Below, piece by piece: positions 20-25,399 of a DNA stretch of 64,000 nucleotides. The notes beneath the pieces are model-generated. The model had not been told where the DNA came from. It worked only from the letters and a program-made list of their open reading frames with translations, and searched no databases. Source of the stretch: Ostrea edulis (lineage: Eukaryota); NCBI RefSeq assembly GCF_947568905.1, contig NC_079169.1:25792001-25856000 (forward strand), given 5' to 3'. Each line of letters opens with the position of its first letter. The first letter of the stretch is position 1. The translations under genes were made by a program, and so were the position numbers.

Positions 20-799
20 TTGCTTAGCAAGAACAAAATGGCTGACAGAAAACAGAGAACATTCAAACCACGAATTAATCCCTTAAAATCAATGACAGCA
101 GCAGAACTGCAGCACAGATTTAGATTTGATCAGGAAGGAATTGAATTTATAACAGATCTAATTCAAAATGACATTATGCCTTTGACCAACAGAAATCACA
201 GTGTGCCTGCAATTGTGCAAGTCATGGTTGCCTTGAGATACTATGCTACAGGTAAGATGCAGCTATGTAGTGGTGACAACTTTGGTCTTCACCAGTCAAC
301 TGTTTCAAGAATAATTCAAAGAGTTACTACAGCTCTTGTTCAACCAAATATTGTCAAGCGATTCCTTTCCTTTCCAATGGACCCAGGAACTATTCGAAAG
401 CACCAGGTTGACTTTTTTGCCATTGCTGGTTTCCCTGGCGTGGTTGGGGCGATTGATGGGACTCATGTGCGAATTATAGCTCCCAGTGAACACGAAGAGG
501 AGTATGTCAACCGGAAAAACTTTCACAGTATAAATGTACAGATTGTATGTGATGCCAGTTATAAGATTTTAGACATCGTGGCAAGCTGGCCGGGAGCGAC
601 TCACGATGCCAGAATACTGAGGGAGAGTGGTCTATTTCAGCTCTTTCAACGACGTTTATTGCCCGTGAAATGCCATCTTCTCGGTGATAGCGGTTATCCT
701 GGGAAAGACTGGCTGCTGACACCTTTTTTAAATCCACAAGAGTGGGCAAGTCACAGGACAAAAGATTTTTTTCTCTTGTCAAAGTTTTTAACAAATTAA
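20..799 (+). pseudogene. PIF/Harbinger-superfamily (HARBI1-like, DDE_Tnp_4) transposase, 3'-truncated
   Basis: ORF has GAIDGTHVRI, NRKNFHSINVQIVCD, WPGATHDARIL and LLGDSGYP motifs. Similarity stops after LLTPFLNPQE (~740), and the C-terminal segment with the catalytic Glu (R..IE..FG.LK.RF) is absent. First ATG is at 38. Confidence 0.9.
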
Positions 800-8189: not shown

Positions 8190-8798
8190 TTAATCTGCTA
8201 CTGAATATTAAAATTTAGCTTAGATATCCTGAACAGGAAAATTAGTATCGATTCCATAGCTAGTGCTATTTTAAACTAATATTATGGTGACCGAAAAAGC
8301 CTAAATGTCTCTTGTTTTGAGTATTGATCATCTTCCTTTGAAGGGGGTTGTCCTTTATTTGAACAAACTTTGACCCCCCCCCCTCACCAAAGTATGCTTT
8401 GTGACAAGTTTGGTTGAAATTAGCTGAATGATTTTGGAGAAGTTGAAAAAGTTCACGGACGACGACGGACAAAACGGATATCATTTGAATAACTCGGGTG
8501 GCCTATAATGGACTAGGTCAAGATAACCACAAGTCGTTTTCCATATACATTGTATATTCATTTTATGACTTAAATACTCACCACAATCCCCACCCTCTAT
8601 AGTTTCTCCCCTAGAGTAGATGATGTAGAACAATGTGTAATTTATTAGAAAAGTACCAAAACAATCGCATGGTGTTTGGACGCGGCCGCCAACGGTTGTA
8701 ATAGTGTTGCATTTCATTCATTATGGCAAAGGCAACAACTTATTAGTTTTAATCCAAGCTTTAATTTTCTCCAGTGGTGTTGAGTGTGTTTTACTTAC

Positions 8799-9587
8799 CA
8801 AGTACGGGGACAGCTGCAGCTATTGAAATAGCACCGCATAGATAGGACAGACTGAGCGCTGATCCCAAATTCCTCAGTCCACAGCTCCTTACAAGAATGG
8901 GTGGCATGAAAACAAAAACCGCTCCTGGGAAACCACCAACAACGGCTGCATATCCATACAGTATCCATAAATGATTTGTAAAACTGACAATGATCGCGGC
9001 GAAACCTCCAACAAAGACAGTAACACAATACACTACAGCGGGAGACACACGATCTGTTAATGCACCCCATAATATTCTACAAATTATTTCTGCTACAGCA
9101 AAAATTGTCATAGCAATAACGATGGAGCTCTCCTGAAAACCCCTGCTTTTGATAAATGGGGGGAATAAGAAAAAATGGGCAACATACCCAATCTGCGCCC
9201 ATGTAAAAGAAGAGCACTCTAGGATAAAGGAGAGGTTTCGATATAGCGACAGACAATTCTTTAAGAGTTTCTGTACAAAGTCGAGACAAACACTATGCGG
9301 AGACCTTTGATATGAGGCTGGATCAAGATGAGTGTCCTTTTCTTTAAGCAGTTCGGGTTGTCGTATCAATAAAGCAGCAACACAGTTATTTAATACAATC
9401 CCACTGATGAGCAGTAGGCAACCTTTTAGCCCATATTCATCAAAAAGATTTTTATACAAGTTTTGAAACAGAAATAATCCCACACCACTAGCGGAACAGA
9501 GGAATCCACTGGCTATAGCACGATGCTTTTCAAAGTAAAAATTCATAACGGTAGCGGCAGGAGAAATCAGGAGTCCAAAGCCAATTC
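8799..9587 (-). CDS. SLC16/monocarboxylate-transporter-like MFS protein, large internal exon
   Basis: GIGFGLLISPAATVMNFYFEKHRAIASG...YGLKGCLLLISGIVLNNCVAALL, typical of SLC16 TM4-12. Acceptor ttgcag at 9588-89, donor gtaagt at 8797-98, phase 1-1. The terminal exon was not located. Confidence 0.9.
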
Positions 9588-10004
9588 CTGCAACCGATAA
9601 TATAAAACGTATGTTAACTTTTAACATCTGGCATACATATATTAAATATTATTCGAGGTTTTTTTCAATCTTCGGATGTGACTGATGCGGTTTTTCTCTC
9701 AAATATGTTTGAGAGGTGAAAATTGAATACTTTAGAACAGCCCAATTCTCAAAATATGAATCAAGAACGTCCTGAACATGTCCTACGATAATTAGTAAAT
9801 GTTTATAAAATCCTTTTGGGAATGGCTATTCCATTAGGTATTTTATATAGATTCATCACAGGCAAAGGTAGATGTCAAGTTTGCAGATAATCATTGTTCT
9901 AGTCCATGACGTTGCACCCCCCTTCCCGAATTGAATATCTGAAAGGAAGGCTTGGTATGCAGTCGTTAATCCATAGAGAGCGGTTGGTATCTTAACGAAT
10001 CAAA

Positions 10005-12121: not shown

Positions 12122-12185
12122 AAAGAGTATCCATTGTCCTTAGGTATAGTGTCTTGTGATATCCTTTCACCCTCATTGACAACTA
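12122..12185 (-). other. Candidate remnant of the transporter N-terminal exon
   Basis: Reads VVNEGERISQDTIPKDNGYS, resembling the SLC16 PPDGG(W/Y) motif, and is followed by gtatgc. The splice phase does not match the next exon cleanly. Confidence 0.35.
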
Positions 12186-12445
12186 CACAGGGAAAAGTGG
12201 CTCGCATGAAATTCGCATGAATATCATGCGAATTCTTCGCATGAAAAGGAGACGAAAAGGACCACGCATGATATTCGCATGAAAAAAATCATGTGATTTT
12301 CATGTGAAATTCGCATGATTATCATATGAAAAATAATTCGCACGATATTCATGCGAATATTATTGTTACCTACTATTAAGGTTTTTCGCACGATATTCAT
12401 GCAAATATTATGCGAATATCATTATATTTTCATATGAAATCCATG
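12186..12445. mobile_element. CACTA/EnSpm-like terminus with subterminal palindromic repeat array
   Basis: ta|CACAGGGAAAA followed by more than a dozen TTCGCATGA/TCATGCGAA-type motifs in both orientations. The matching other end was not found in the window. Confidence 0.6.
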
Positions 12446-12776
12446 TAATGTATACATTTCAATGCTAGTACTTGAATTTTTATAAAAACTTAATGAAAAG
12501 TTTCATAAAATTCTGTGTTGCTTAGCAATTTGTTCCTCACAGATATCTACAGTTTTGTTTATAATTAAATATACAACTGATCATCAAGGTTTCACTGTTA
12601 ATGATATTCATACAGAGATAATAAGTACAATCTCAAAATCATGCAGTAAATGAATTACATCAAAATTCATTATTTAAAACTGCTTAATTTGTACCCCGAT
12701 TTTGAGGAAGTACCATTATAAGTATGAATATCCAGGTATTCTTTTGATTAATAAACAACTGGACACTTTCTCTTTC

Positions 12777-12857
12777 TTAATCTTCTTTATTGCAAGCTTC
12801 AACTTTCTTTTTCATTCTCTGCTCAAGGGCAACCCATCTGTCTGGTGTCTGTTTCAT
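12777..12857 (-). CDS. Unknown multi-exon gene, last exon (MKQTPDRWVALEQRMKKKVEACNKED*)
   Basis: Strong acceptor ttttcttttctcttgcag; phase 0; ends in TAA. Confidence 0.7.
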   Translation of the reverse strand: MKQTPDRWVALEQRMKKKVEACNKED

Positions 12858-13884
12858 CTGCAAGAGAAAAGAAAACCATTTGTAAATAATTTAAATGAAA
12901 TACATGATTGCTCAACTGCAGTTTCAAAATCATTATTTTCCAAATTTATCAAGATGACATAGAAACTGAACAAGTACATTTATAACTAGAAATAGCAATC
13001 TCAGAAAATACCATCTCCACAAATCTATCTACAGATGTCAGAATAGTTAATTGAAGAAATTTTCAGTTGAAAAGGAAATTCAGAATTTTCCTTTTTTAAA
13101 CCTTGTTTGAATGACCATTGGATAAGGCCATAGCACATTTACAGGTTTTCTTACTATGGGATTTCTAATTTTCAAGGCCTTGAAAAGAAATAACACTTTT
13201 TTCTGTCAGACCTAGTTATGTACTTGACCTTGACTTAGGACACTCCCAGATAATAACGGTTACCATTCTTTGTATCAAGTCTGGGCTTGCAGTGTATGTT
13301 TCACTGTTATAAAGTCATGGAGAAGACAAAAAGTGAACAGTTTTACCAATGACCTTATATTGCCTAAATGATGTTCAATGATAATAATTACAAAACCATA
13401 GGTCATCAGTAACAATGTACATGCATCTAATGTTTATCTCATACAAAGTTATTGATAAGATTTACATTAAATTTTTCTGCAAGTGGCTTTAGTCTTACAC
13501 TATAACCTTGTGTCAAGGTCATGATCTACCTTCAAGTGGTACAAATGTATATAATTATATGTTTCCTTGAGCATGCAATTCGTATTTGTTAGAAGAAATT
13601 TCAAGGCAGGAATTACATAATTTCCTGACATACTAAGACTGGCCTTGAACTAATACAAATGACCTTGACACAATGCCAGGTCATAAATAATCTTTTATAA
13701 AGCAGAAACTTCCAATGTTTCTGAGAGAGTTATGGACAGGATATGAATTATAGGTAAACATTTTCTGTGACTAATAATGAACTTGTCTTAATGACCTTGG
13801 TTTAACATTATGACATATCCTCAATACAATATATAGTTGCTGTCTGGGTACACTTGCACAGACATACCGTAAAGTTGCTGCTTT

Positions 13885-14137
13885 TTGTAACAGTGACGTG
13901 TTTCATACCGATTGTTAAGCCGTTCTTGGCACACTGATTTTGACTGCGGATAACTCCGTTTACCTGATCAGGATATGGGGTTCACGGCGGGTGTGACCGG
14001 TCAACAGGGGATGCTTACTCCTCCTAGGCACCTGATCCCACCTCTGGTGTGTCCAGGGGTCCGTGTTTGCCCAACTATCTATTTTGTATTGCTTGTAGGA
14101 GTTATGAGATTGATCACTGTTCGTTATCTTCACCTTG
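13885..14137 (+). mobile_element. Penelope-like retroelement 3' end fragment
   Basis: cgtgtttcataccgattg...gttatcttcacc, the reverse complement of the 6942-7190 copy. Confidence 0.8.
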
Positions 14138-14225
14138 CATAGTAGAGTTGATTCATCCTATATTTTGGTTTTGGAGGGAGGTGGGCAGAAACTAATAATT
14201 CTGATATTTCTTAAAGATTGCTTAC

Positions 14226-14318
14226 CATTGTGTCAATATTCCTTTTTAAAAAAGCACGCCAGAAGTCTATGGCTGTGGTTGGGTTGTTGAATAATCTGTG
14301 CCCATCTGCGAAAGCCCT
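14226..14318 (-). CDS. Unknown multi-exon gene, exon (RAFADGHRLFNNPTTAIDFWRAFLKRNIDTM)
   Basis: Acceptor ctttacag, donor gtaagc, 93 bp, open in phase 0. Confidence 0.75.
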
Positions 14319-14436
14319 CTGTAAAGCAATGAACCAAAAAAATATATCTAAATATTAAGACTGGGCATGATTTTGATATCTCATTTCTGTTCTCTGATTC
14401 TTATCATACAATTAAATAACAAGTTCAATATATTCA

Positions 14437-15090
14437 AACAAGAGGTACTGTGAGCAATGCTCCCTAAGAATACCCCCCGCTTACCCCAATCTCCCAAAGG
14501 GTGTTGTTAATAGGTATAAATTACCTCTTTCCTGAGTGTAAAAATATGGTATGCCTTTGTAAAAGGAAATGGAAGATATAGTCCGAACACAAATCCATAG
14601 TATAAACCTATAATTTTGACCTTGAGATCAAAGGTCAAGGTCATAAAGAGGTCATGAATGTACATGAAACATAGTCTCATGGCGATACACCCATGTCTTA
14701 TGGTATGACTATGTCAAAATCCTATAATCAATTTTGACCTTGATGTCAAAGATCAAGGTTATATGGAGGTCATGAAGGTACCCGACACATCGTCTCATGG
14801 TGGTACACTCATGTGTCAAATATGGTATGCCTATGTCAAAGAACAAAGAAGTTATGGCCAGGACACGAATCCATTGTTTTAAAAACCTTTCATTTTGACC
14901 TTGAGGTCAAGGTCATATAGAGGTCATGAAGGTACTCGACACATCGTATCATGGTGATCCACCTGTGTGCCAAATATGGTATGTCTATGTCAAAGAACAA
15001 AGAAGTTATGACCCGGACACGAATCTGCAGACAGACAGACGGACAGACAGAGTGATTCCTATATACCCCCATGAACTTCGTTCGGGGTAT
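14437..15090 (+). mobile_element. HINE with internal tandem units, (GACA) microsatellite and 3' hairpin
   Basis: Head aacaagaggtactgtgagcaatgc; repeats of ttttgaccttgaggtcaaggtc; tail gacagacagacggacagacag..taccccccatgaacttcgttcggggtata. Confidence 0.8.
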
Positions 15091-15269
15091 AAATATATCA
15101 GAAACAATATACATGGCTTAGTCATTCCAAAGGGAAAGTTGAAAATATTCAAATGTTAAAGGATGCTTTATGATCCTTTCATCACACTATGAAGGACAAA
15201 AACAAATAGCAATAGGTCAACAGAGTGATTCAAGTCACCTCATATGTAAAAAAGAATTTCAATCCTTAC

Positions 15270-15398
15270 CAGTGCAAGGGTCACCTTGAAATAAATTTTT
15301 ACATCCGACTCGGATGGCGACACCCATAAGGCTGAGAAAAGGTATCTCTGCAGATTTGTAATGGGCATCATCTCAACCCGCTTCTCTTGAGTCACTAG
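15270..15398 (-). CDS. Unknown multi-exon gene, exon (LVTQEKRVEMMPITNLQRYLFSALWVSPSESDVKIYFKVTLAL)
   Basis: Acceptor aatttcag, donor gtaagg, 129 bp, open in phase 0. Confidence 0.75.
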
Positions 15399-16261
15399 CT
15401 GAAATTTAATGTATGCATGAACAACAGGAAAATATCACCATGTTTCATATTATTTAGACTGAGAAATGAAATGTAGGATGTTACATTAGGCTAGCTTATA
15501 TCTACATCCCATCTGCATTTTTTCTTATAAACTCAGCTGAATACTTTGGCATTCAAAACACCATAACACAGACAGGCAGATAAAAAGTTAAAGGTAATTA
15601 ATGATTTTTATTTTTATTTCACAAATGTTGAACTTTCTTGTGCAAATTAAGTCATGAAATAAAATTAAAATTCATGCTCAAGTTGAACAATAACAGCTGT
15701 TCCCTTGATTTAGCTATACAAGTGTGGTGTGTATAATTTACTTCAAATAAGCCATATTTAATCAATCTATCAAGAAATCAATAAATTAATGAAAAGAAAA
15801 GTTTTACATTGTAAATTTTGAACGTTCAATGTGTCAAAACACAGACAACTGTGCAAACTGGACAAATGTTTATAACACACTAAAACTTAGGCATCTTTAA
15901 AAAAATATTTATTTGCCCTATCTCAACCAACTTGCAAAAAATGGCCCTACTTAAAACGTTTTTAACCTCAAGGAAACAATAAATTTTTTAATTAATTCCA
16001 GAATTTTCTTATCCCGTCAACAAAGATTTTAATCCTAGTTATACCTTTAATTTTATTAGATTTTGAAAGTTCAAAATTTGGTCGTGTAATTTTCTAGAAT
16101 TTGTTCCCCCACCTACCTATTGACCCAATTTTTTTTTTATCCTGAGTTGGGAGAGGACAAAAAAAGCCTCCAATTAATTAGATGCCATACTGTACGCTCC
16201 TGCAACTTCTAAAATTATTTTGCATGTCAAAATTTTATATTTTTAGTGTAAAATTCTGTAC

Positions 16262-16381
16262 CTTTTGACGAACCTGGTTCCTCCAGTTGGTGAAAGAATG
16301 GGAGGCATATGAGAAACATGTGATGATGACATTTTTGTCTGCCTCCCATCCACACCCCTCCAGAACTGATGTAATTTGTCT
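16262..16381 (-). CDS. Unknown multi-exon gene, exon (RQITSVLEGCGWEADKNVIITCFSYASHSFTNWRNQVRQK)
   Basis: Acceptor ctttttatcctcag, donor gtacag, 120 bp, open in phase 0. Confidence 0.75.
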
Positions 16382-17006
16382 CTGAGGATAAAAAGTAAAG
16401 GGATTAACATGTACGTGTTTTCTTGATATTGGTGTGGATTAAATTCACTGTTCTAAAAGTACTGCATCTGTTTACAATTTCTATGTACCTGGTAAGTGAT
16501 ATTGTACTACCTGAACTAGAAATTGAAAAAAAACATGTATACAAATCACTAAAAAATTGTCTCAGTCATAGGGGCCCATATTAATAAGAAAGTGAAAACT
16601 GCACTTAATATATCAATATTTAAAACAAATCATTAATTATTTGTAAATAAAACAGGATTTTTGCATTCCTGATGTGAACACAGGCACATCATGCGCAGAA
16701 CTAGAAGGGGGTGGGGTGTGTGTTTCGGACCCCCCTCCCTGGAATTTGCGGGGTAAATAAATGTACATAATAAAGTATCTAATAAATGGTCCTAGCCCCC
16801 CCCCCCCCTTCCGGAAAACAAGAACCTCTGTAAAGTTAGTACTAAGAGCCATACATACGATTCTCAAGAAGTAGTAAAGTGGCTAACAACACCCAACACC
16901 ATGCACTCTTAAATTATCACACCTTTTATTAAATCTTTAAGGAACACCTTTGTATTTTTCATTCAGAGTATCTTGGGATCTTTTTGTGTGTGTATATATA
17001 TATATT

Positions 17007-17144
17007 ATTACTACAGTAACTTGATCCAAAGAGTCGGATCACGTCGAGTTGACAGGCGCGGATGATCAGATCACACGAGACGCAATGATCCGCGCCTGTC
17101 AATGAGACATGATCCAACTCTTCGGATTAAGTTACTGAAGTAAT
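17007..17144. repeat. ~138 bp imperfect hairpin (MITE-like)
   Basis: attactacagtaacttgatccaaagag..ttgacaggcgcggat pairs with atccgcgcctgtcaa..ctcttcggattaagttactgaagtaat. Confidence 0.8.
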
Positions 17145-17757
17145 TTTTAAATCCCCGTTTATAAGATAATAAATGTAATCCAAAATTATCAAAAACACAG
17201 ACATACTATGAAATTATGTTTGGTGTACGCCATTTCGTTTGTGACACGGTCAATATTTTCCACAAATAAAGTTGTGTTGATGCATTGTGGCGTCATTGTG
17301 ATGGCATTTCAGAGGATATTGATACGGAATCAGAAAACCACAGTGTGGTGATCCGGAAAATAGGCTCACACGCTGTGAAATTCACAGTATCAAAGAACTA
17401 TACACTGATGGGTATAAAATAAATATACATATTACTTTTTAGAAGAAATTTCTGGTCTAATGGTTCTTGAGAACAAGAATTTTTAATGACCCCATCCAAT
17501 TTTCACTATTTCTTGATTATCTCCCCTTGGAAGAGGATGTGGCCTTTCATTTGAACAAATTTGAATCCCCTTTACCCATGGATACTCTGTGCCAAATTTG
17601 GTTGAAATTGGCGCAGAGGTTCTGGAGAAGATGAAAATTTGAAAAGTTAGTGACCACAGATGCCGGACAAATTTCGATCAGAAAAGCTCATTTGAGCCTT
17701 CAGCGCAGGTGAGCTAATAATAGCAATGACAGATTGTTATTTATAAAATATGTATAC

Positions 17758-17829
17758 CTTTAAATCCTCGTCATCTTCTCTTATCCATGGGCATGTGAAG
17801 AAGCTTTTTAGATGAGCTGTTAAAGGTTT
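17758..17829 (-). CDS. Unknown multi-exon gene, most 5' surviving exon (KPLTAHLKSFFTCPWIREDDEDLK)
   Basis: Acceptor ttttttttattcag, donor gtatac, 72 bp, open in phase 0. Confidence 0.7.
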
Positions 17830-18004
17830 CTGAATAAAAAAAAAAAAGTACATTAGCAACTAATTAGTAAAGGACCAGAGCCACAAAGTACTAAAATTGG
17901 CCCTTTCACCAAAATAAATGAGACTTTCACAGTTGATGCTCTAGGATTTATAGGTCATAGAACAATTTATTTTATAACAATATCTTTTCTAGTTTTCGTT
18001 TTAC

Positions 18005-18421
18005 AGTCGAGATGACTGTGTCACCAACATGTATGAAATCGTTCAGTTCATAAGACAAAGATGGCCCAATACCAAAGTTATCATCTCATTAACTACCCCA
18101 AGAAGTGATTTGCAGAAAAACAGTGCAGAAATGGTAAATGCTATTCTGAAACAGAAGTTTCTACAAAATAACGATGGAGCTATATCTTTTGTTGATCACC
18201 ACATGTTTGTTGACTCTGGTCTTAACCTAACCCTGTTGAATAAGGATGGATATCATCTCAATCCTAAAGGAGTATCCAAACTTGCTGCCAATTTCCGTTC
18301 GGCTATACATGCATCCCTACACCTAAATGTAGATCGTCGTTCCAGAAGCAGTTCACAGCGTCGGAATCACGGACGTGGACGAGGATTTCCTGGAAAACCT
18401 AGATACGCCAGACGAGATTAG
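18005..18421 (+). mobile_element. Non-LTR retrotransposon ORF1 C-terminal SGNH/GDSL esterase domain (5'-truncated)
   Basis: KVIISLTTPR..NAILK..DGYHLNPKG (DGxH motif) followed by an Arg/Ser-rich tail; lies 181 bp upstream of an APE ORF2. Confidence 0.8.
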
Positions 18422-18602
18422 ATAATCCTCCAGAGGTGTACATGCAGGTGTTGTAACATTCAGATATGTATATATATGTTTTTTCTTCTTCTTGTACATA
18501 GTTTGTATTATATTAGCAGTATAATAATTCTGAACCAAATTATATGTACATGCAGATAGTCAACATGGTATACTATTTTATATATTGTTAAACTTCATAT
18601 AA

Positions 18603-20305
18603 ATGAAGGTAAAAAATTTAAGATTTGGCCTACTTAATGTTGGAGGTCTAACATGTAAAGAGGGTAATAAGTTAGAGGAACCCTCATTTGTTGAGCAATT
18701 TAAGAAATATGATATTTTCTTCTTAATCGAAACCCACATAGGGTATGATTTCTGTGTTCCAAATATTGAGCCCTTTTATTGTCATACTATATGCAGGGCA
18801 AAGTCTACTAATAATAGATACTTTGGAGGATTAGCAATATTTTGTAATAAGTATATCAAACAACATGTAAAGATACTGACAAACAACAACAAAGACTTTC
18901 AGTGGCTGAAATTTGACAAAGATTTCTTTGGCTTTGAAAATGATTTATATCTATGTGTGATATATATTCCACCATTAATATCCTCATATTATAAGGCTTT
19001 ACAAATAGATATACTGGACTCCATTGAAAAAGATGTCTATAGATACTCCAAGTTTGGAGATGTTGTATTATGTGGGGACTTTAATGCAAGAGTGTCACAA
19101 GAAAATGATTTTATACCCAATGACAATTGTCTGTACGTACCAACTCATGTTAATTATCAATCTGATAGAAATATTAGGGAGCGTACAAGTCAAGATGAGA
19201 CAATTGATGCAAGAGGTAAACAATTATTAGACTTGTGTATTGGTAATCAACTAAGAATATTAAATGGCAGAGTATTCGGAGATTGTTTTGGAAGATACAC
19301 CTGTTATACAACAAAAGGTGCTAGTGTGGTAGACTATGTGATAGCCTCTGAGAAAATATTACCATGTTTTTTATATTTTCATGTAAATCAGTTCCACCCC
19401 ATATTCTCTGATTGTCATTCAGTACTAGAATGGCAAATATGTGTTGATTTTGCTTTTAAAATATGTGATGAACTGCCTGTATTTCAGTTAAAACCCAAGT
19501 TTATATGGGATGATAATTCAGCTGAGAAGTTTTGTTTAGCACTTAGTAGCACTGAATTCAGCAAGAAATTAAATTATTTTGTGAATGATCAAATTATTGA
19601 AAACACACAAAATTCAATAGACAAAGCCTGTGATGATTTGACATCCATTATACTATCTGCAGCTAAACAATCTCTGAAAGAGAACAGAAATGTGTCCAGC
19701 AATAAAACACACACATTAAAAAAACCAAAAATTGGTTTGATAACGACTTATTTAAGAAAAGAAAAGATCTATTACAATATGCAGAAATTTTTGCTAAATA
19801 CCCGAAAGATCCTTTGGTTCGAGGACACTTCTTTAAACTTAGGAGAAACTATGCAAAACTTAGGAAATTTAAATGTAGACAGTTCAAAAACAGCATGCTT
19901 GAAAAGATTGATGAACTGCATGATAATAATCCGAAAATGTTTTGGGAATTAATAAAGAAACTCTCAGATGAGAAAGTGGATGACAAAGGATCCCAAATAT
20001 CTTCTAAAGATTGGCTACACCATTTCATTATGTTAAATACTGTTACAGATTCTTTCAAATCTCGCATTGCTAGTTTGGATGAACAAGTATCTAAACTTGA
20101 ATCTAAAGCATGTTTTAATGAATTAGACTTTAGGATTTCTAAAACAGAAATCTCTGAAACAATATGTAAATTAAAATATAACAAATCTCCAGGATTAGAT
20201 AGAATAACTAATCACATGCTGAAACATGGACAAACCGCACTTATCGATAGTTTACATAAACTATTTAATAGCTGTATAGTGGGAGGTATTTACCAACTCA
20301 CCTAG
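18603..20305 (+). pseudogene. LINE ORF2 (RTEX/CR1-type): APE endonuclease plus the start of RT, frameshifted and 3'-truncated
   Basis: LLNVGGL, DIFFLIETH, YIPP, LCGDFNAR, ILNGR, SVVDYVI motifs. After a frameshift (~19730-19800) it continues NPKMFW..KSPGLDRITNHMLK..LFNSC and stops before the RT core. Confidence 0.9.
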
Positions 20306-23300
20306 TAAGAAAGGAAAAACTATTACAAGCATTGTTGTGGTTAAAAGCAAATAATCAAATATATGCCAACATATCTTTAAATTTTGACCATATTCCCGAA
20401 GATATAAACATTGAAAATGAACTAGCTGTCATCAATAACACTTATGAAGAGTATGCTGTAATACCATCAGATTATGTGATACCACACATTGACATTGAAA
20501 CTTTGTTGAATAGTGATATTCCTCATTTATCATTGAAAAGATGCAGGTCTACTCCATTAAATGCATACGACACTCCGAAAGGTGAAGAAATGGCATTCCC
20601 TCATTTGTTTCCCCTTGGTGTTAATGGATTTGGTCATGAAAGACTTGCAAAATTAACTGCTTCCAAGTATTTTAAGTGTAGGATGTATTATAAGGATGGT
20701 AGATTCAGAAAAGATATTTCCTATTTACTGCATGCAGTAAATTATTATGAAAAGGAAAGATTATTAAATGCTGTTAGTATTCACATGAGAATGAGAAAAA
20801 GCACTGGGTTGCTAACAGCAGCAGATGTAAATGATATTTCAAGTAATCCTGATTTATTACAAAACTCTTACATGTTTATGAAATTTATGAAAGGAACAGC
20901 TGCCTATTGGAAAAATAATTTATTAAATTTATTGGCAATGTTTAAATGTCTTGGACCTCCTAGCTTATTTGTAACATTATCAGCAAATGACATGCATTGG
21001 CCTGATTTGATCATGTCCCTGCAATGTTGCAGCTATGATACAGCATGTAACATGACAAACTGTTTACAGTTGGTGAAAAATGACCCAGTTTTGACAGCAC
21101 TTCATTTTCAACGGCGCTTTAGGATACTACTGAAAGATGTTATTCTTGGTCCTCTAATGCCTTTAGGAAAAGTAGTCGATTATTTCGCACGTGTAGAGTT
21201 CCAAAACCGCGGAAGCCCACATTATCATATTTTCTTTTGGATTGAAAATTTTTCAGAAATATTTAGTGACCATGAAAGGCTTGTAAAGTATATCAATGAC
21301 GTAATAAGCACAAAACACAGCACAAGTCGGTATGCTTCAAAATTTCAAACTCATCGTCATTCTGACTACTGTTTGAGAAAAACTGGCCGATGTCGCTTTG
21401 GTTTTCCATTCAGAGTAAAGAAGGAAACATACATTTTGAGTAATGTGGATTTACAATCAAATGTTATCAAAGGCAAGTTTTATGAAACTGAACGCACTGC
21501 TGATGATTGTTATATTAATGCTTTTAACCCTATTATTCTGAATCATTGGCAAGCTAATACGGACATACAAGTAATAGGTAATTGTGAATCAGCTGCTTAT
21601 TATGTCTGTGCTTATTTATGTAAAGCAGAACCCGAAAATTTAAAATTTGAATTGTTAAAAGTCATTAACAACTTAAATCAAATGACTGTTTTGTCTCAGT
21701 GTTCTAGAATGCTAAAAATTGGATATTGTGTGTTAAAGTCAAGAAAGCTAAGTGCTCAAGAAGCAGCATATAGGCTTCTTCAAGATTTAAATTTGATTAT
21801 TAGCTCAAGATCAGTTCAGACACTAAATACAAAACCACCAGAAAAGAGGTTCCGTGTACTGAAGTCAAAACAAGAGCGAGAGGAACTAGATGATACAAGT
21901 ACAGACATATTTTACAACAATGTGATAGACTATTATCATGCACGTCCAAATGAACTTTTTAATCTATGTTTATTTGAATTTTCACAATGGTACGTTAAGT
22001 GTGGAGACAAAGATGTTGATATAACTGTAGCTTCTTCAAGTAAGCAACCACGTACAAGGTTAAAGCACCATTTCAACATGTCATAATGCGTAAGAGATTA
22101 AAAGCCTTGATAATTCGCCTCCCAAAGTTGCCATTGTCATCTGATGATTACTTTTACAGTCTCTTGATGTGCTTTTTACCCCATCAAAATGAGGAAGAAC
22201 TTATACAAAGAAATCAGACATCAAAATATAGCACCGCAAGAGATGCATTTATTGCTAAAAGACAGAACATGCAATTAGACTTTTTAGAATCAGCAACGCT
22301 AGTAGATGAAATTGAAAATGCAGTGCGTTTTATTCAATGTTCTGTAAAAGAGATGGAGGCTTTTATTGCCCCATCTACTAGTGAACATGTACATGTTGAT
22401 GATGACTGTCTTTTGGAAGATCCCCCCATTATCTATATCACACCCCAATAACTTGGATGATGTAGATTTTCATTTGAGTAGTGAATTACAAAGTGAACTT
22501 AGTTGTGATAATAGTGATGAGCTGCATATCAATGAAATAAGTTCATCATCTATATCTTTTGATGAGATACAAAGCAGAATAGCAAGGTTAACAAGGTGTC
22601 AAAAAACTAATGCGGTACATTTTTAACCATTATAAAAACAGGGATAATTCTCAGCAACTTTGCATGTTTATTAGTGGTGGAGCAGGAGTTGGAAAAAGTT
22701 ACCTCACAAGACTGATAATTGACTGGTTAAACTGCTGTTGCCCAATTGTTTGTGGAAAATCCCCAGTAATGGTATGTGCTTCAACTGGAACAGCAGCTAG
22801 AAATATCTTGGGAATCACAATACATAGTGCACTGTATTTACCAGTGCAACATGGAAATGAACCCAATTTTTATGAATTATCTGGGAAAAGTTTGAAGAAA
22901 TTAAGATTCATTTATTCATATGTTCATACACTCATCATTGATGAAATTTCAATGGTTAGTGCAAAAACTTTTGAATACATTCATAGAAGACTAACTTCAA
23001 TTAAAGATAATGATAAACCATTTGGAAATTTAAATGTTATTGTCATAGGGGATTTCCTTCAGTTGAGACCTGTTAAAGGCAAATATGCCTTTGAAAATTC
23101 AATTCTATGGTCAACTTTTAAGCCTTTCATTCTCTAAGAAAATGTACGACAATCTGAAGATGTTACATATGCTTCAATTCTAAATCGAGCTAGGGTTGGT
23201 TTACTGAGTGAAGATGATCTCAAGATTTTACAGTCAAGGTTAATTCAACCCCCGCAAACAGATATTTCATCCCTACTTCATTTATTTCCTACACTGAAAG

Positions 23301-23963
23301 AAGTTCAAGAACATAACAACAAGATGCAAGTGTTGTTAAGTCGAAAATGTATTGAAGTGAAAGCTAAACATTATTATTCTCAAGATGACATAGAAAAAAA
23401 GGGTCCCATCTCTGATGATGATATCCCTGTAGATGATAGAAATGCAGGTGGGTTACCATGCCAGTTACAAATATCTACTGGGACAAGGGTTATGTTAATA
23501 AAAAATATATATACATCAAAAGGTTTAGTAAATGGAGCTCTTGGATATGTAGAGTCAATAGAAATGCACCAAGAAATGACTGGAGAAGTTAACTTAATAT
23601 ATGTAAAATTTGATGACCCACATATTGGAGGTATTCTTAAAAGGGTTGAACATAATAATGCAATAGCTATTGAACCTTTATATCAAGAATTTTATTACAA
23701 TGGAAGAATACTTGTTAGAGAGCAATTTCCTCTTATTCAAGCATGGGCAACTACAATCCATAAAGTGCAAGGTGCATCTTTATCACAAGCAGTTATTTCA
23801 ATTGGTAACAATGTTTTTGAAAATGGAATGGCTTATGTTGCTTTAAGCAGAATTAAAAAAAAACCTGTCTGGTTTATATTTACTGGCATTTAATTCTCGG
23901 AAAGTTGCACCCCTCTCAAAGCTTTGGAGGAATATACAAGACTAAGTTCTTTGACAAAGTAAT
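20290..23963 (+). pseudogene. Helentron/Helitron2-type Rep-helicase (HUH Rep + Pif1 helicase), decayed
   Basis: ALLWLKANNQIY, PSLFVTLSAND, RVEFQNRGSPHYH (Ser variant of motif 2), YYVCAYLCK, SGGAGVGKS, DEISMVS, GDFLQLRPV, TIHKVQG, YVALSR. Frameshifts near 22086, 22450, 22620 and 23860; in-frame stop at 23135-37; N-terminus missing. Confidence 0.92.
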
Positions 23964-24557
23964 AAGCCATTTAATGTTATATTTGTAGATATGTCCAAGT
24001 TGTCTCCCTGCATACTGAGAACTTTTGTACAAAAAAGTATTAGATTTATTGATTTATCCCTGTTTAGTTTTAAAAACATGCATATTTATAAGACTTTAAA
24101 GACATTCATTGCACTTTCTTTCTTTATGCAACAGTACCAGTATTACATCTTTTTTGCTCATTTCAGCTTGCTTGATCTTGTCTTAAAATAATATTAACAT
24201 TATTTCATAACATAACAATATGACAATGACAATATAAGGGGATTGTTTGATAAATTGAATATGAAAAGAGAAAATACCTACAAGAAGCACTTAATTGTAC
24301 ACTGCAACAGTATTGATAAATCAAAGCAATTGTTGATAATTTACTTTAAAAATGCCTGTCAATGATCATGATGACCTAAGATTTAACAAATTATTTTTTT
24401 CAAAATATGAATACAAATGATTGTGTAGATTATTGCAAAGAAGCCTAACATTGCATGCATATTCAAAAAGAAAATTATGACATTAAGAAAATGAAAAAAA
24501 AATATAGATGCGAAATGTTTGATATGTAATTATGATACAATATTGTGAAAATTGCAG

Positions 24558-24974
24558 ATGCTGAAAATAAAGGATATTAAAGACAAAGATGTTAAACATC
24601 TGCCACCATCCCCTTCAGTGAGAGGAGTTGTGCTAGATGTCAGTGACATAGAAAAATCACAAAATGCCCAATACAAAGATAAATTCTTTGCAATCATTGC
24701 TGATGAAACTGCTGCAGTATCTGTAACAGTGTATGATCCAAACAAAAGAAACAAATTTATTAAGGGAATGGCTGTAGTTCTAATGAATGTTCTTGTGAAG
24801 CAAAATTTTATAGCTGTTACAAGCAAAACAGATGTGGGAATTGCAAGACCATTCTCTATCCCTGATGATGTTAAGAGTGAAGAACCAACCCTTGCTGGAC
24901 AAACAATGACCTTAAAAGCTGCACTAGCTTCACCTGTGAAAACACTACTTACAGTCAAGGGAAAAGTTGTTAAG
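24558..24974 (+). CDS. OB-fold ssDNA-binding (RPA-like) protein, exon 1
   Basis: RGVVLDVS..FAIIADETAAVSVTVYD..FIKGMAVVLMNV OB-fold pattern; ATG after ttgcag; donor gt at 24975. Confidence 0.7.
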
Positions 24975-25129
24975 GTACTATATATTTAAAGATTGGAAAT
25001 ATATTATTTAGATTTTAAAGTAGTCTACTTTAATTGTGTCATTAAATGCATTAATATAATTTAGAAATATGAATCAATAAAGCATAAAAAACCTGTTTGG
25101 ATTCTCCAATTTTTTAATTTTTATTTCAG

Positions 25130-25342
25130 TTGTCACCAGCAAGCAAGAAAAGGGTTGAGCAAAATGATGTAAAATTCCAAGAGGTAATTCTGAAAGATAT
25201 TGATAGTCATGCAACAGTTGCAGTGTGGGACTCAATGGTAAATACTATTGAAAAGGGAGAATGTGTGCAGATTACAAAATGCAGGGTGCGTTTGTTCAAC
25301 GAGCAGAAAAGGTTAACCACTACAAGATCATCCCAGTCCGAG
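25130..25342 (+). CDS. OB-fold ssDNA-binding (RPA-like) protein, exon 2 (second OB fold)
   Basis: Splices in frame to give TVKGKVVK|LSPA..QEVILKD..ATVAVWD..IEKGECVQITKCRV; acceptor ttatttcag, donor gtttgt. Confidence 0.7.
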
Positions 25343-25399
25343 GTTTGTTGTTATACATATATAATCAATGGGATAATTCTATGAAAAATGTTTATTCTA

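What the first reader, a model, noticed from the sequence alone, without database searches (positions are those of the whole stretch)
12777..17829. Hidden five-exon, all-phase-0 gene missed by the ORF track
Five short minus-strand exons (17758-17829, 16262-16381, 15270-15398, 14226-14318, 12777-12857) each have canonical AG/GT sites and lengths divisible by 3. They join into one stop-free 164-aa C-terminal protein ending in TAA, which I cannot assign to a family. The gene sits just inside a CACTA-like end. The segment W..EDDEDLK..I...FTNWRNQVRQKL loosely recalls the helical domain of CACTA TnpA/ORF2 proteins (inference). The frame is intact even though its 5' part is displaced by a LINE, which suggests a young or constrained gene.
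Basis: partly seen in the sequence, partly recalled or inferred. Interest (0 to 1): 0.75.

Follow-up and report, generated by a model that had tools for sequence, protein, structure and literature searches.

The report
Truncated oyster transposon helper gene
The five exons are real and already annotated in the flat oyster, but they are only the tail end of the second gene of a cut-and-paste jumping gene, in a copy that has lost its start, its promoter and its transposase.

Summary
Observation confirmed. The five minus-strand exons have AG/GT sites, are all phase 0 and end in TAA. Together they equal residues 9-172 of the public Ostrea edulis model LOC125647078, so the gene is not hidden.

It is not a host gene. 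Its exons recur at 17 or more loci on most chromosomes. They lie inside a transposon family with 23-bp CACAGGGAAAAGTGGCTCGCATG terminal inverted repeats, TA on both flanks and TCGCATG subterminal repeats. Complete copies run from 6.8 to 19.6 kb.

The full gene has eight coding exons and gives a 244-257 aa protein. That protein is found only in oysters (Ostrea, Saccostrea, Magallana, Crassostrea) and has no Pfam family. Comparison of copies gives dN/dS of about 0.15.

In complete copies it sits head to head with an intron-rich, C2H2-led transposase-like gene. That gene resembles EnSpm/Plavaka-type enzymes only at motif level; the Pfam tests failed.

The window copy breaks at 17869-17871. Exons 1-3, the promoter, the transposase and the other end are nowhere in the 64 kb.

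No similarity to plant TnpA was found, so a TnpA-like end-binding role is inference only. The scan has met similar two-gene elements elsewhere in this genome. RNA evidence could not be obtained.

The parts
12184..12185 (.). TA dinucleotide flanking the element end (putative 2-bp target duplication, or the outermost bases of the repeat)
   Evidence: TA flanks both ends of the two complete copies inspected (C10, C2), with no longer duplication. TA is kept in 42 of 44 TIR hits.
12186..12208 (+). Terminal inverted repeat CACAGGGAAAAGTGGCTCGCATG, the gene-distal (3') end of the element
   Evidence: the two ends of the complete C10 copy match perfectly over 25 bp including TA; 23 forward and 21 reverse hits in the genome at up to 2 mismatches, and none for the control pattern.
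12186..12560 (.). Subterminal region with repeated TCGCATG / CATGCGA motifs (candidate protein-binding sites)
   Evidence: seven motif hits lie between 12202 and 12356; 0.02 are expected by chance. The same motif runs at 12-17 per kb in both 400-bp ends of the complete copy against 0.5 per kb over the whole element.
12777..12857 (-).
13894..14140 (.). 247-bp dispersed repeat inserted in the last intron of this copy only
   Evidence: it matches unrelated places in other loci and is absent from the homologous intron of the other copies.
14226..14318 (-).
15270..15398 (-).
   Evidence: It is about three times more diverged from the other copies than its flanking introns (Fisher P = 0.018).
16262..16381 (-).
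   Evidence: As a query against 1.84 billion proteins it found only its own oyster family.
16666..17727 (.).
   Evidence: homology to the other copies jumps from window 16665 to 17728.
17758..17829 (-). The public model extends it to an ATG at 17853.
   Evidence: It has one codon fewer than all other copies.
17869..17871 (.). Breakpoint where homology to all other copies of the element stops
   Evidence: One search finds no match to residues 1-83 of the full-length protein anywhere in the window. One search finds no second TIR in the window.
17869..18009 (.). 141-bp fragment of a repeat with more than 300 copies at 99-100% identity, abutting the break
18029..19952 (+). LINE-like 5' fragment: an ORF with a weak GDSL/SGNH esterase match, then an ORF with an AP-endonuclease domain. 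No reverse transcriptase was seen.
20332..23893 (+). Helitron Rep (Helitron_like_N) and PIF1-type helicase ORFs

Best explanation
The five exons are coding exons 4-8 of the second ('helper') gene of a cut-and-paste transposon family of Ostrea edulis.

The family has 23-bp CACAGGG... terminal inverted repeats flanked by TA and TCGCATG subterminal repeats. It carries two head-to-head genes. One is an intron-rich transposase-like gene that starts with a C2H2 finger. The other is this eight-exon gene for a protein of about 250 aa, with an acidic N-terminus, a predicted coiled coil and a conserved all-helical C-terminal domain of about 165 aa.

The window copy is a 5'-truncated remnant. It keeps the 3' end of the element and the last five exons. 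It has lost exons 1-3, the shared promoter region, the transposase gene and the other end. So this copy is most likely dead, and its open frame is a leftover.

Shown: the exon structure, the multi-copy status, the ends, the truncation, purifying selection on the gene family, and its restriction to oysters.

Inferred: the protein pairs through its coiled coil, binds the subterminal repeats and helps the transposase assemble the two ends, as TnpA does for En/Spm.
For: Exons and splice sites.

Public model: the five translations match O. edulis LOC125647078 exactly.

Copies: 10-11 copies of exons 2 and 3, and 17 or more loci by profile search, all belonging to this element family. Splice sites are conserved and indels are in frame.

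Element: shared extent, TIRs and TA flanks. Complete copies are 96-98% identical over 11.6 kb.

Selection: window versus other copies gives dN/dS 0.11-0.21 in nine of ten pairs (0.30 against the degraded C8 copy), with dS about 0.2. The excess of synonymous changes has Fisher P = 2e-7.

Full-length relatives: proteins of 244-257 aa exist in five other oyster species, at several loci each.

Likely transcripts: two full-length relatives come from 927-960-bp assembled contigs, too short to hold the introns, so they are probably spliced transcripts (inference).

Truncation: residues 1-83 map to three upstream exons in complete copies but nowhere in the window.

Partner gene: the opposite strand has conserved exons with 28-61% relatives in other families of this genome. 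They show RD.P.G.LH..LG..KH, H(3)H and GP..FEK motifs that align colinearly, though weakly, with Transposase_21-bearing ORFs of the same genome. There is also a Plavaka lead from the Atlas.

Against: The protein has no Pfam, PDB or out-of-oyster relative. Both AlphaFold models are of low confidence, pLDDT 47-49. DNA binding and the TnpA-like role are therefore untested.

The transposase assignment fails every Pfam test. I did not find the C(2)C motif.

Whether the oyster orthologues in other species also lie inside such elements could not be checked.

TA could be part of the repeat and not a target duplication.
Confidence: 0.8

Rival explanations
1. The truncated copy has been co-opted. Driven by a new upstream start, it makes an N-terminally truncated protein that lacks the acidic and coiled-coil part and acts as a regulator or repressor of the family, or does a host job.
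For: The frame is open across all five exons with intact splice sites. NCBI's pipeline calls a complete CDS from an ATG at 17853.
Against: That ATG lies inside the acceptor's poly-T tract and codes MYFFFFIQ. No promoter or upstream exon exists in the window. The copy has private changes at two positions invariant in all other family members (F57Y, N108Y), plus two private codon indels. It also carries later insertions in its introns. No expression data were available.
Confidence: 0.08
2. The gene is captured host cargo that the transposon merely carries and does not need for transposition.
For: It has no similarity to any known transposon protein or Pfam family. The family is confined to oysters. 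Sister transposase families in this genome show no detectable copy of it.
Against: All 17 or more loci found in the genome belong to this element family, and no TIR-free parent was seen. It is a complete gene with its own start, head to head with the transposase gene. Coding constraint is kept between element lineages and across oyster genera. It is multi-copy in other oysters too.
Confidence: 0.1
3. It is a conserved single-copy host gene that happens to lie next to a transposon end.
For: It is annotated as an ordinary protein-coding locus.
Against: The same exons, introns, 3' flank and TIR recur on chromosomes 1, 2, 3, 7, 8 and 10 and on an unplaced scaffold.
Confidence: 0.01

Closest known systems
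En/Spm (CACTA) two-product system: TnpD transposase plus TnpA end-binding protein
   Same: The termini start with CAC and end with GTG. There are arrays of short subterminal repeats. A second element-encoded protein exists beside the transposase. The element is large, with spliced genes.
   Different: The flanks are TA (2 bp), not a 3-bp duplication. The two genes are separate and head to head, not alternative splice forms of one transcript. The helper protein has no detectable similarity to TnpA or Pfam Transposase_24. The transposase fails Transposase_21 and DUF4218.
ESTA, Plavaka and Mirage lineages of the CMCT group (Kojima 2025, PMC12730594)
   Same: CA..TG-type termini and a 2-bp (TA) duplication. 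An H(3)H motif lies ahead of a GP..FE(K/R) motif. The Atlas gives a Plavaka lead for the first catalytic region.
   Different: ESTA and Plavaka were described in fungi. The oyster enzyme is split into many short exons, the C(2)C motif was not found, and no profile reached significance. The partner gene is unrelated to the TET/JBP cargo of the fungal elements.
Two-gene CACTA/Plavaka-like transposons already noted by this scan in the same genome (s1-311836, s1-311814, s1-311865)
   Same: A head-to-head, intron-rich pair: a transposase starting with a C2H2 finger and a partner of about 250-265 aa of unknown function.
   Different: I could not show that the partner proteins are homologous. A profile of this family finds only its own copies in the genome. 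Those notes are unchecked leads.
Uncharacterized oyster proteins LOC125647078 and LOC125661747 (O. edulis), LOC133193175 (Saccostrea echinata) and K1R4B0 (Magallana gigas)
   Same: They are the same protein family at 61-100% identity. LOC125647078 is this very locus.
   Different: The public records give no function and do not say that the gene is transposon-borne or that this locus is truncated.

Membership tests
Oyster LOC125647078-like protein family (244-257 aa, uncharacterized) | Sequence identity over the conserved C-terminal domain of about 165 aa | tested here: met
   The window exons equal residues 9-172 of P0010. Identity to the other members is 61-92%.
Oyster LOC125647078-like protein family (244-257 aa, uncharacterized) | Full-length N-terminus (acidic region plus coiled coil, coding exons 1-3) | tested here: not met
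   Residues 1-83 of P0009 have no match in the 64-kb window but do map upstream of exon 4 in six other copies.
CACTA/EnSpm and wider CMCT transposons | Termini 5'-CAC...GTG-3' with terminal inverted repeats | tested here: met
   CACAGGGAAAAGTGGCTCGCATG sits at both ends of the complete copies and at window 12186-12208.
CACTA/EnSpm and wider CMCT transposons | Target-site duplication: 3 bp for canonical CACTA, 2-5 bp for the CMCT group | tested here: inconclusive
   Both ends of the two complete copies are flanked by TA only. That fits the 2-bp lineages (Mirage, PlavakaA, ESTA) but not canonical CACTA. No empty site was available to prove duplication.
CACTA/EnSpm and wider CMCT transposons | Subterminal repeat arrays | tested here: met
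   TCGCATG/CATGCGA runs at 12-17 per kb in both 400-bp ends against 0.5 per kb in the element as a whole.
CACTA/EnSpm and wider CMCT transposons | Transposase matching Pfam Transposase_21, DUF4218 or Plavaka | tested here: not met
   No exon reaches any of these profiles. Genome-wide scans with PF02992, PF13960 and PF18759 hit other elements but none of these copies. tblastn with local Transposase_21 ORFs is negative.
CACTA/EnSpm and wider CMCT transposons | [quoted passage not shown] | tested here: inconclusive
   H(3)H (KTHLSVH) and GP..FEK are present and conserved in a 36-61% relative. They align weakly to local TnpD-like ORFs. C(2)C was not found in the frames inspected.
TnpA-type helper (Pfam Transposase_24 and relatives) | Sequence similarity to plant TnpA | tested here: not met
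   Pfam scans of the single exons and of P0001, P0007 and P0009 give no transposon family.
TnpA-type helper (Pfam Transposase_24 and relatives) | Binding to the element's subterminal repeats | not testable with these tools
   This needs a binding assay. The structure models are too poor (pLDDT 47-49) to support any argument.
LINE (the element said to displace the 5' part) | AP endonuclease plus reverse transcriptase | tested here: inconclusive
   An AP-endonuclease domain lies at 18603-19952 and a weak esterase-like ORF at 18029-18421. No reverse transcriptase ORF follows; a Helitron Rep starts at 20332.

The most novel reading that the evidence does not exclude
The protein of about 250 aa is a new, oyster-restricted class of transposon end-binding helper. 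It would be the functional counterpart of TnpA, with a new fold, and would serve a barely described animal lineage of EnSpm/Plavaka/ESTA-like transposons that use TA targets and an intron-rich, C2H2-led transposase. Truncated copies such as this one could then supply coiled-coil-less proteins that damp transposition.
Probability: 0.2. Interest if true: 0.55.

Novelty: new member of a known kind. Interest (0 to 1): 0.3.

Why it matters
For genome annotation, LOC125647078 and its paralogues are listed as ordinary oyster genes. They are in fact transposon genes, and this locus is a truncated remnant.

For transposon biology, the family adds one more case of an animal CAC-ended, TA-flanked element that keeps a second, lineage-specific gene under purifying selection. 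Together with its clear subterminal repeats, this gives a simple testable system for how such helper proteins work.

The window locus itself is ordinary.

Tried and rejected
Joined peptide. Exons were searched one by one by reference. The full-length analyses used public proteins returned by the searches: P0010, which is identical to the model, and P0001 and P0009.

Protein family searches that gave nothing:
- Pfam on each exon and on three family proteins gave nothing except a sub-threshold MTHFR match (16-19.5 bits against a cut-off of 24). I take that as chance, because the models are all-helical.
- The Atlas search with exon 3 gave nothing.
- A PDB profile search gave only E = 0.7-1.3 hits.
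- The other three hits of the big search are repetitive proteins and were rejected.

Structure. The two AlphaFold runs gave pLDDT 47 and 49. I therefore ran no fold search, since the matches would be meaningless.

Transposase identity:
- Pfam on the exons of two families.
- Genome scans with PF02992, PF13960 and PF18759.
- tblastn with local TnpD-like ORFs.
- PDB searches with three exons.
- All were negative. Only weak hhalign matches and an Atlas lead remain.

A false lead. A 74% match between the element and window 33700-34016 turned out to be a non-coding dispersed repeat, not a displaced part of the gene.

Tools not available:
As a result the 141-bp repeat, the sister families and further element ends could not be read.

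I took no stretch for human, and no N runs were met in the region.
Full report
**1. The observation**

Each follows an AG and precedes a GT. The lengths are 72, 120, 129, 93 and 81 nt, each is open in one frame, and the last ends in TAA at 12779-12777.

GC content is about 35% and the neighbours are animal genes. These are a single-exon beta-1,3-galactosyltransferase at 31122-32231 and an MFS transporter exon at 8791-9627. None of the five exon peptides matches a Pfam family.

**2. It is a multi-copy gene**

Searching the window's own genome (895 Mb, ten chromosome-size pieces) with exon 3 and exon 2 gave 11 and 10 matches. They lie on chromosomes 1, 2, 3, 7, 8 and 10 and on a small scaffold. 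Amino-acid identity is 82-98% and the exon spacing is the same.

I fetched those loci and aligned each exon with 20 nt of flank. The AG and GT sites are kept in nearly all copies. Only three copies (C8, C3c, C27) carry stops or frameshifts.

**3. The gene lies in a transposon**

Homology between the window and the other loci runs from window 12184 to 17871. It is interrupted by insertions private to the window copy, at 13894-14140 and 16666-17727.

Among themselves the other loci share much more. Two copies are 98% identical over 11.6 kb.

The shared unit ends in CACAGGGAAAAGTGGCTCGCATG, and this sequence is found in inverted orientation at the far end of complete copies. With the flanking TA the two ends of the C10 copy match perfectly over 25 bp. 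In the genome the 25-mer occurs 23 times forward and 21 times reverse at up to two mismatches. The control pattern occurs 0 times.

Paired ends delimit elements from 101 bp to 19.6 kb. In the two complete copies whose flanks I could read, both sides carry TA and no longer duplication.

Both subterminal 400-bp regions are packed with TCGCATG/CATGCGA, at 12-17 per kb against 0.5 per kb for the element as a whole. The window end has seven such motifs within 170 bp, where 0.02 are expected.

**4. The protein family**

A search of 1.84 billion representative proteins with exon 2 alone returned one real relative, P0001, an 'uncharacterized protein' of Ostrea edulis. The other three hits are repetitive proteins. 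This names the genome.

Word searches with P0001 and with a family profile found only oyster proteins. They come from O. edulis, Saccostrea echinata, S. cucullata, Magallana gigas, M. angulata and Crassostrea virginica, at 61-92% identity. None has a name or a Pfam domain, and there are several loci per species.

One of them, P0010 (LOC125647078), consists of the window's five exon translations in order, as residues 9-172. They are preceded by MYFFFFIQ, read from an ATG at window 17853 through the poly-T tract of the acceptor. The gene is therefore already in the public annotation.

Full-length members are 244-257 aa. Two of them come from assembled contigs of 927-960 bp. These are too short to hold the introns, so they are probably spliced transcripts. 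This last point is inference.

These public proteins took the place of the joined peptide.

**5. The window copy is truncated**

tblastn with the full-length S. echinata protein maps residues 84-251 onto the five window exons. Residues 1-83 map nowhere in the 64 kb. In six other copies they map onto three further exons within 1.5 kb upstream.

In a complete copy these upstream exons read as follows:
- ATG...MEGEMDSQQSIDLFR, followed by a GTAAGT donor.
- GSQSED...RLL, followed by a phase-1 intron.
- YEEICALRQEVK...GSNVK.

The whole gene thus has eight coding exons. The window holds exons 4-8.

No second TIR and no other part of the element occur in the window. At 17869 the copy abuts a 141-bp piece of a repeat with more than 300 copies at 99-100% identity. 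Next come ORFs with a weak esterase-like match and an AP-endonuclease domain, which look like a LINE 5' part. Then come Helitron Rep and PIF1-helicase ORFs.

So a LINE is indeed nearby. But the gene's 5' part is missing, not merely pushed aside.

**6. Constraint**

Window versus other copies gives dS of about 0.2, dN of about 0.03 and dN/dS of 0.11-0.21 in nine of ten pairs. The exception is 0.30 against the degraded C8 copy. The excess of synonymous change has P = 2e-7. The gene evolved as a protein while the lineages separated.

This says nothing about the window copy since its insertion. That copy shows:
- two private substitutions at positions invariant in all ten other aligned proteins (F57Y, N108Y);
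- two private codon indels;
- two later insertions in its introns.

With 164 codons, an open frame is not strong evidence of constraint on this copy.

**7. The partner gene**

In complete copies the opposite strand carries a series of short conserved open frames. The first has a C-X2-C-X12-H-X5-H finger and starts about 0.6 kb from the helper gene's ATG, head to head. Later ones read ..DDTSANKSKKWKPLHC....RDIPVGILHWLYLGLGKH....KVKTHLSVH.. and ..GPMDCYKEDAFEKLHG...

Two of these exons have relatives at 28-61% identity in several other element families of this genome, with the same exon limits.

From my knowledge of EnSpm/Plavaka transposases, and from the motif list in PMC12730594, these look like the D, D, H(3)H and E regions of that group. 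The formal tests give the following:
- Pfam Transposase_21, DUF4218 and Plavaka all fail.
- tblastn with local Transposase_21 ORFs fails.
- PDB searches fail.
- hhalign puts three exons in the expected order on local TnpD-like ORFs, but weakly, with P = 0.03-0.4.
- The Atlas gives a Plavaka cluster at 0.89.
- I did not find the C(2)C motif.

I therefore call the element EnSpm/Plavaka/ESTA-like by its ends, its TA flanks and its motifs. Membership is not proven. Earlier notes of this scan describe similar head-to-head pairs elsewhere in this genome. I used them as leads only.

**8. How it probably works**

Shown:
- The gene is an element-borne, selected, complete gene that shares a promoter region with the transposase gene.
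- The element has dense subterminal repeats.

Inferred:
- The protein dimerises through the predicted coiled coil (roughly residues 45-70).
- Its conserved helical C-terminal domain binds the TCGCATG arrays. That domain has invariant W, C and H residues, such as CGWE, TCFSFASHSF, ADGH and IDFW.
- This brings the ends together for the transposase, as TnpA does for En/Spm.

There is no sequence or structural support for DNA binding. The two AlphaFold models have pLDDT 47-49 and show only helices.

**9. Verdict**

The transposon reading is right in outline and wrong in several details. The locus is a truncated remnant of an already annotated but uncharacterised oyster transposon gene.

Noticed in passing
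window 15270-15398 and flanks: Exon 3 differs from the main subfamily at 15 of 129 nt, mostly at synonymous sites. Its 140 nt of flanking intron differ at only 5 (P = 0.018). Exon 2 with its flanks is 98-99% identical. The copy looks mosaic, perhaps through conversion between diverged lineages that align only in exons.
   Followed up: partly
P0009 (Saccostrea echinata) versus O. edulis copies: One S. echinata paralogue is 86% identical to the O. edulis protein, while other Saccostrea and Magallana members are 61-69%. Either several old lineages persist or there was transfer between oyster genera. No DNA was available to test this.
   Followed up: no
window 17869-18009: A 141-bp piece of a repeat with more than 300 copies at 99-100% identity sits exactly at the break of the transposon copy. 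Its nature is unknown because no further genome letters could be fetched.
   Followed up: partly
window 18029-19952: A LINE-like 5' fragment. One ORF has a weak GDSL/SGNH esterase match, as in the ORF1 of some CR1-type LINEs (from memory). It is followed by an AP-endonuclease ORF. No reverse transcriptase follows.
   Followed up: partly
window 20332-25384: Helitron Rep and PIF1 helicase ORFs, followed by ORFs with HIN-200 and Ssb-like OB-fold matches. The scan has already noted this (s1-268764).
   Followed up: partly
window 26266-27030: A tandem array of a unit of about 145 bp. It is also present inside the complete C10 copy of the transposon and at other loci.
   Followed up: no
window 31122-32231 (-), 8791-9627 (-), 20-799 (+): A single-exon beta-1,3-galactosyltransferase gene (Galactosyl_T, E = 1e-42), an MFS transporter exon, and a Harbinger-type DDE_Tnp_4 ORF.
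   Followed up: no
complete copy C10:17624424-17644069 (el10 positions about 13280-13305): A TGACGTATGACGTCAC palindrome, resembling a cAMP-response element, lies between the two divergent genes about 80 bp upstream of the helper gene's ATG. It may be part of a shared promoter.
   Followed up: no
G000 C6:25334458-25338418: Another copy of the same family, 4 kb long with both ends and the last exons of the helper gene, lies about 470 kb from the window on the same chromosome.
   Followed up: no
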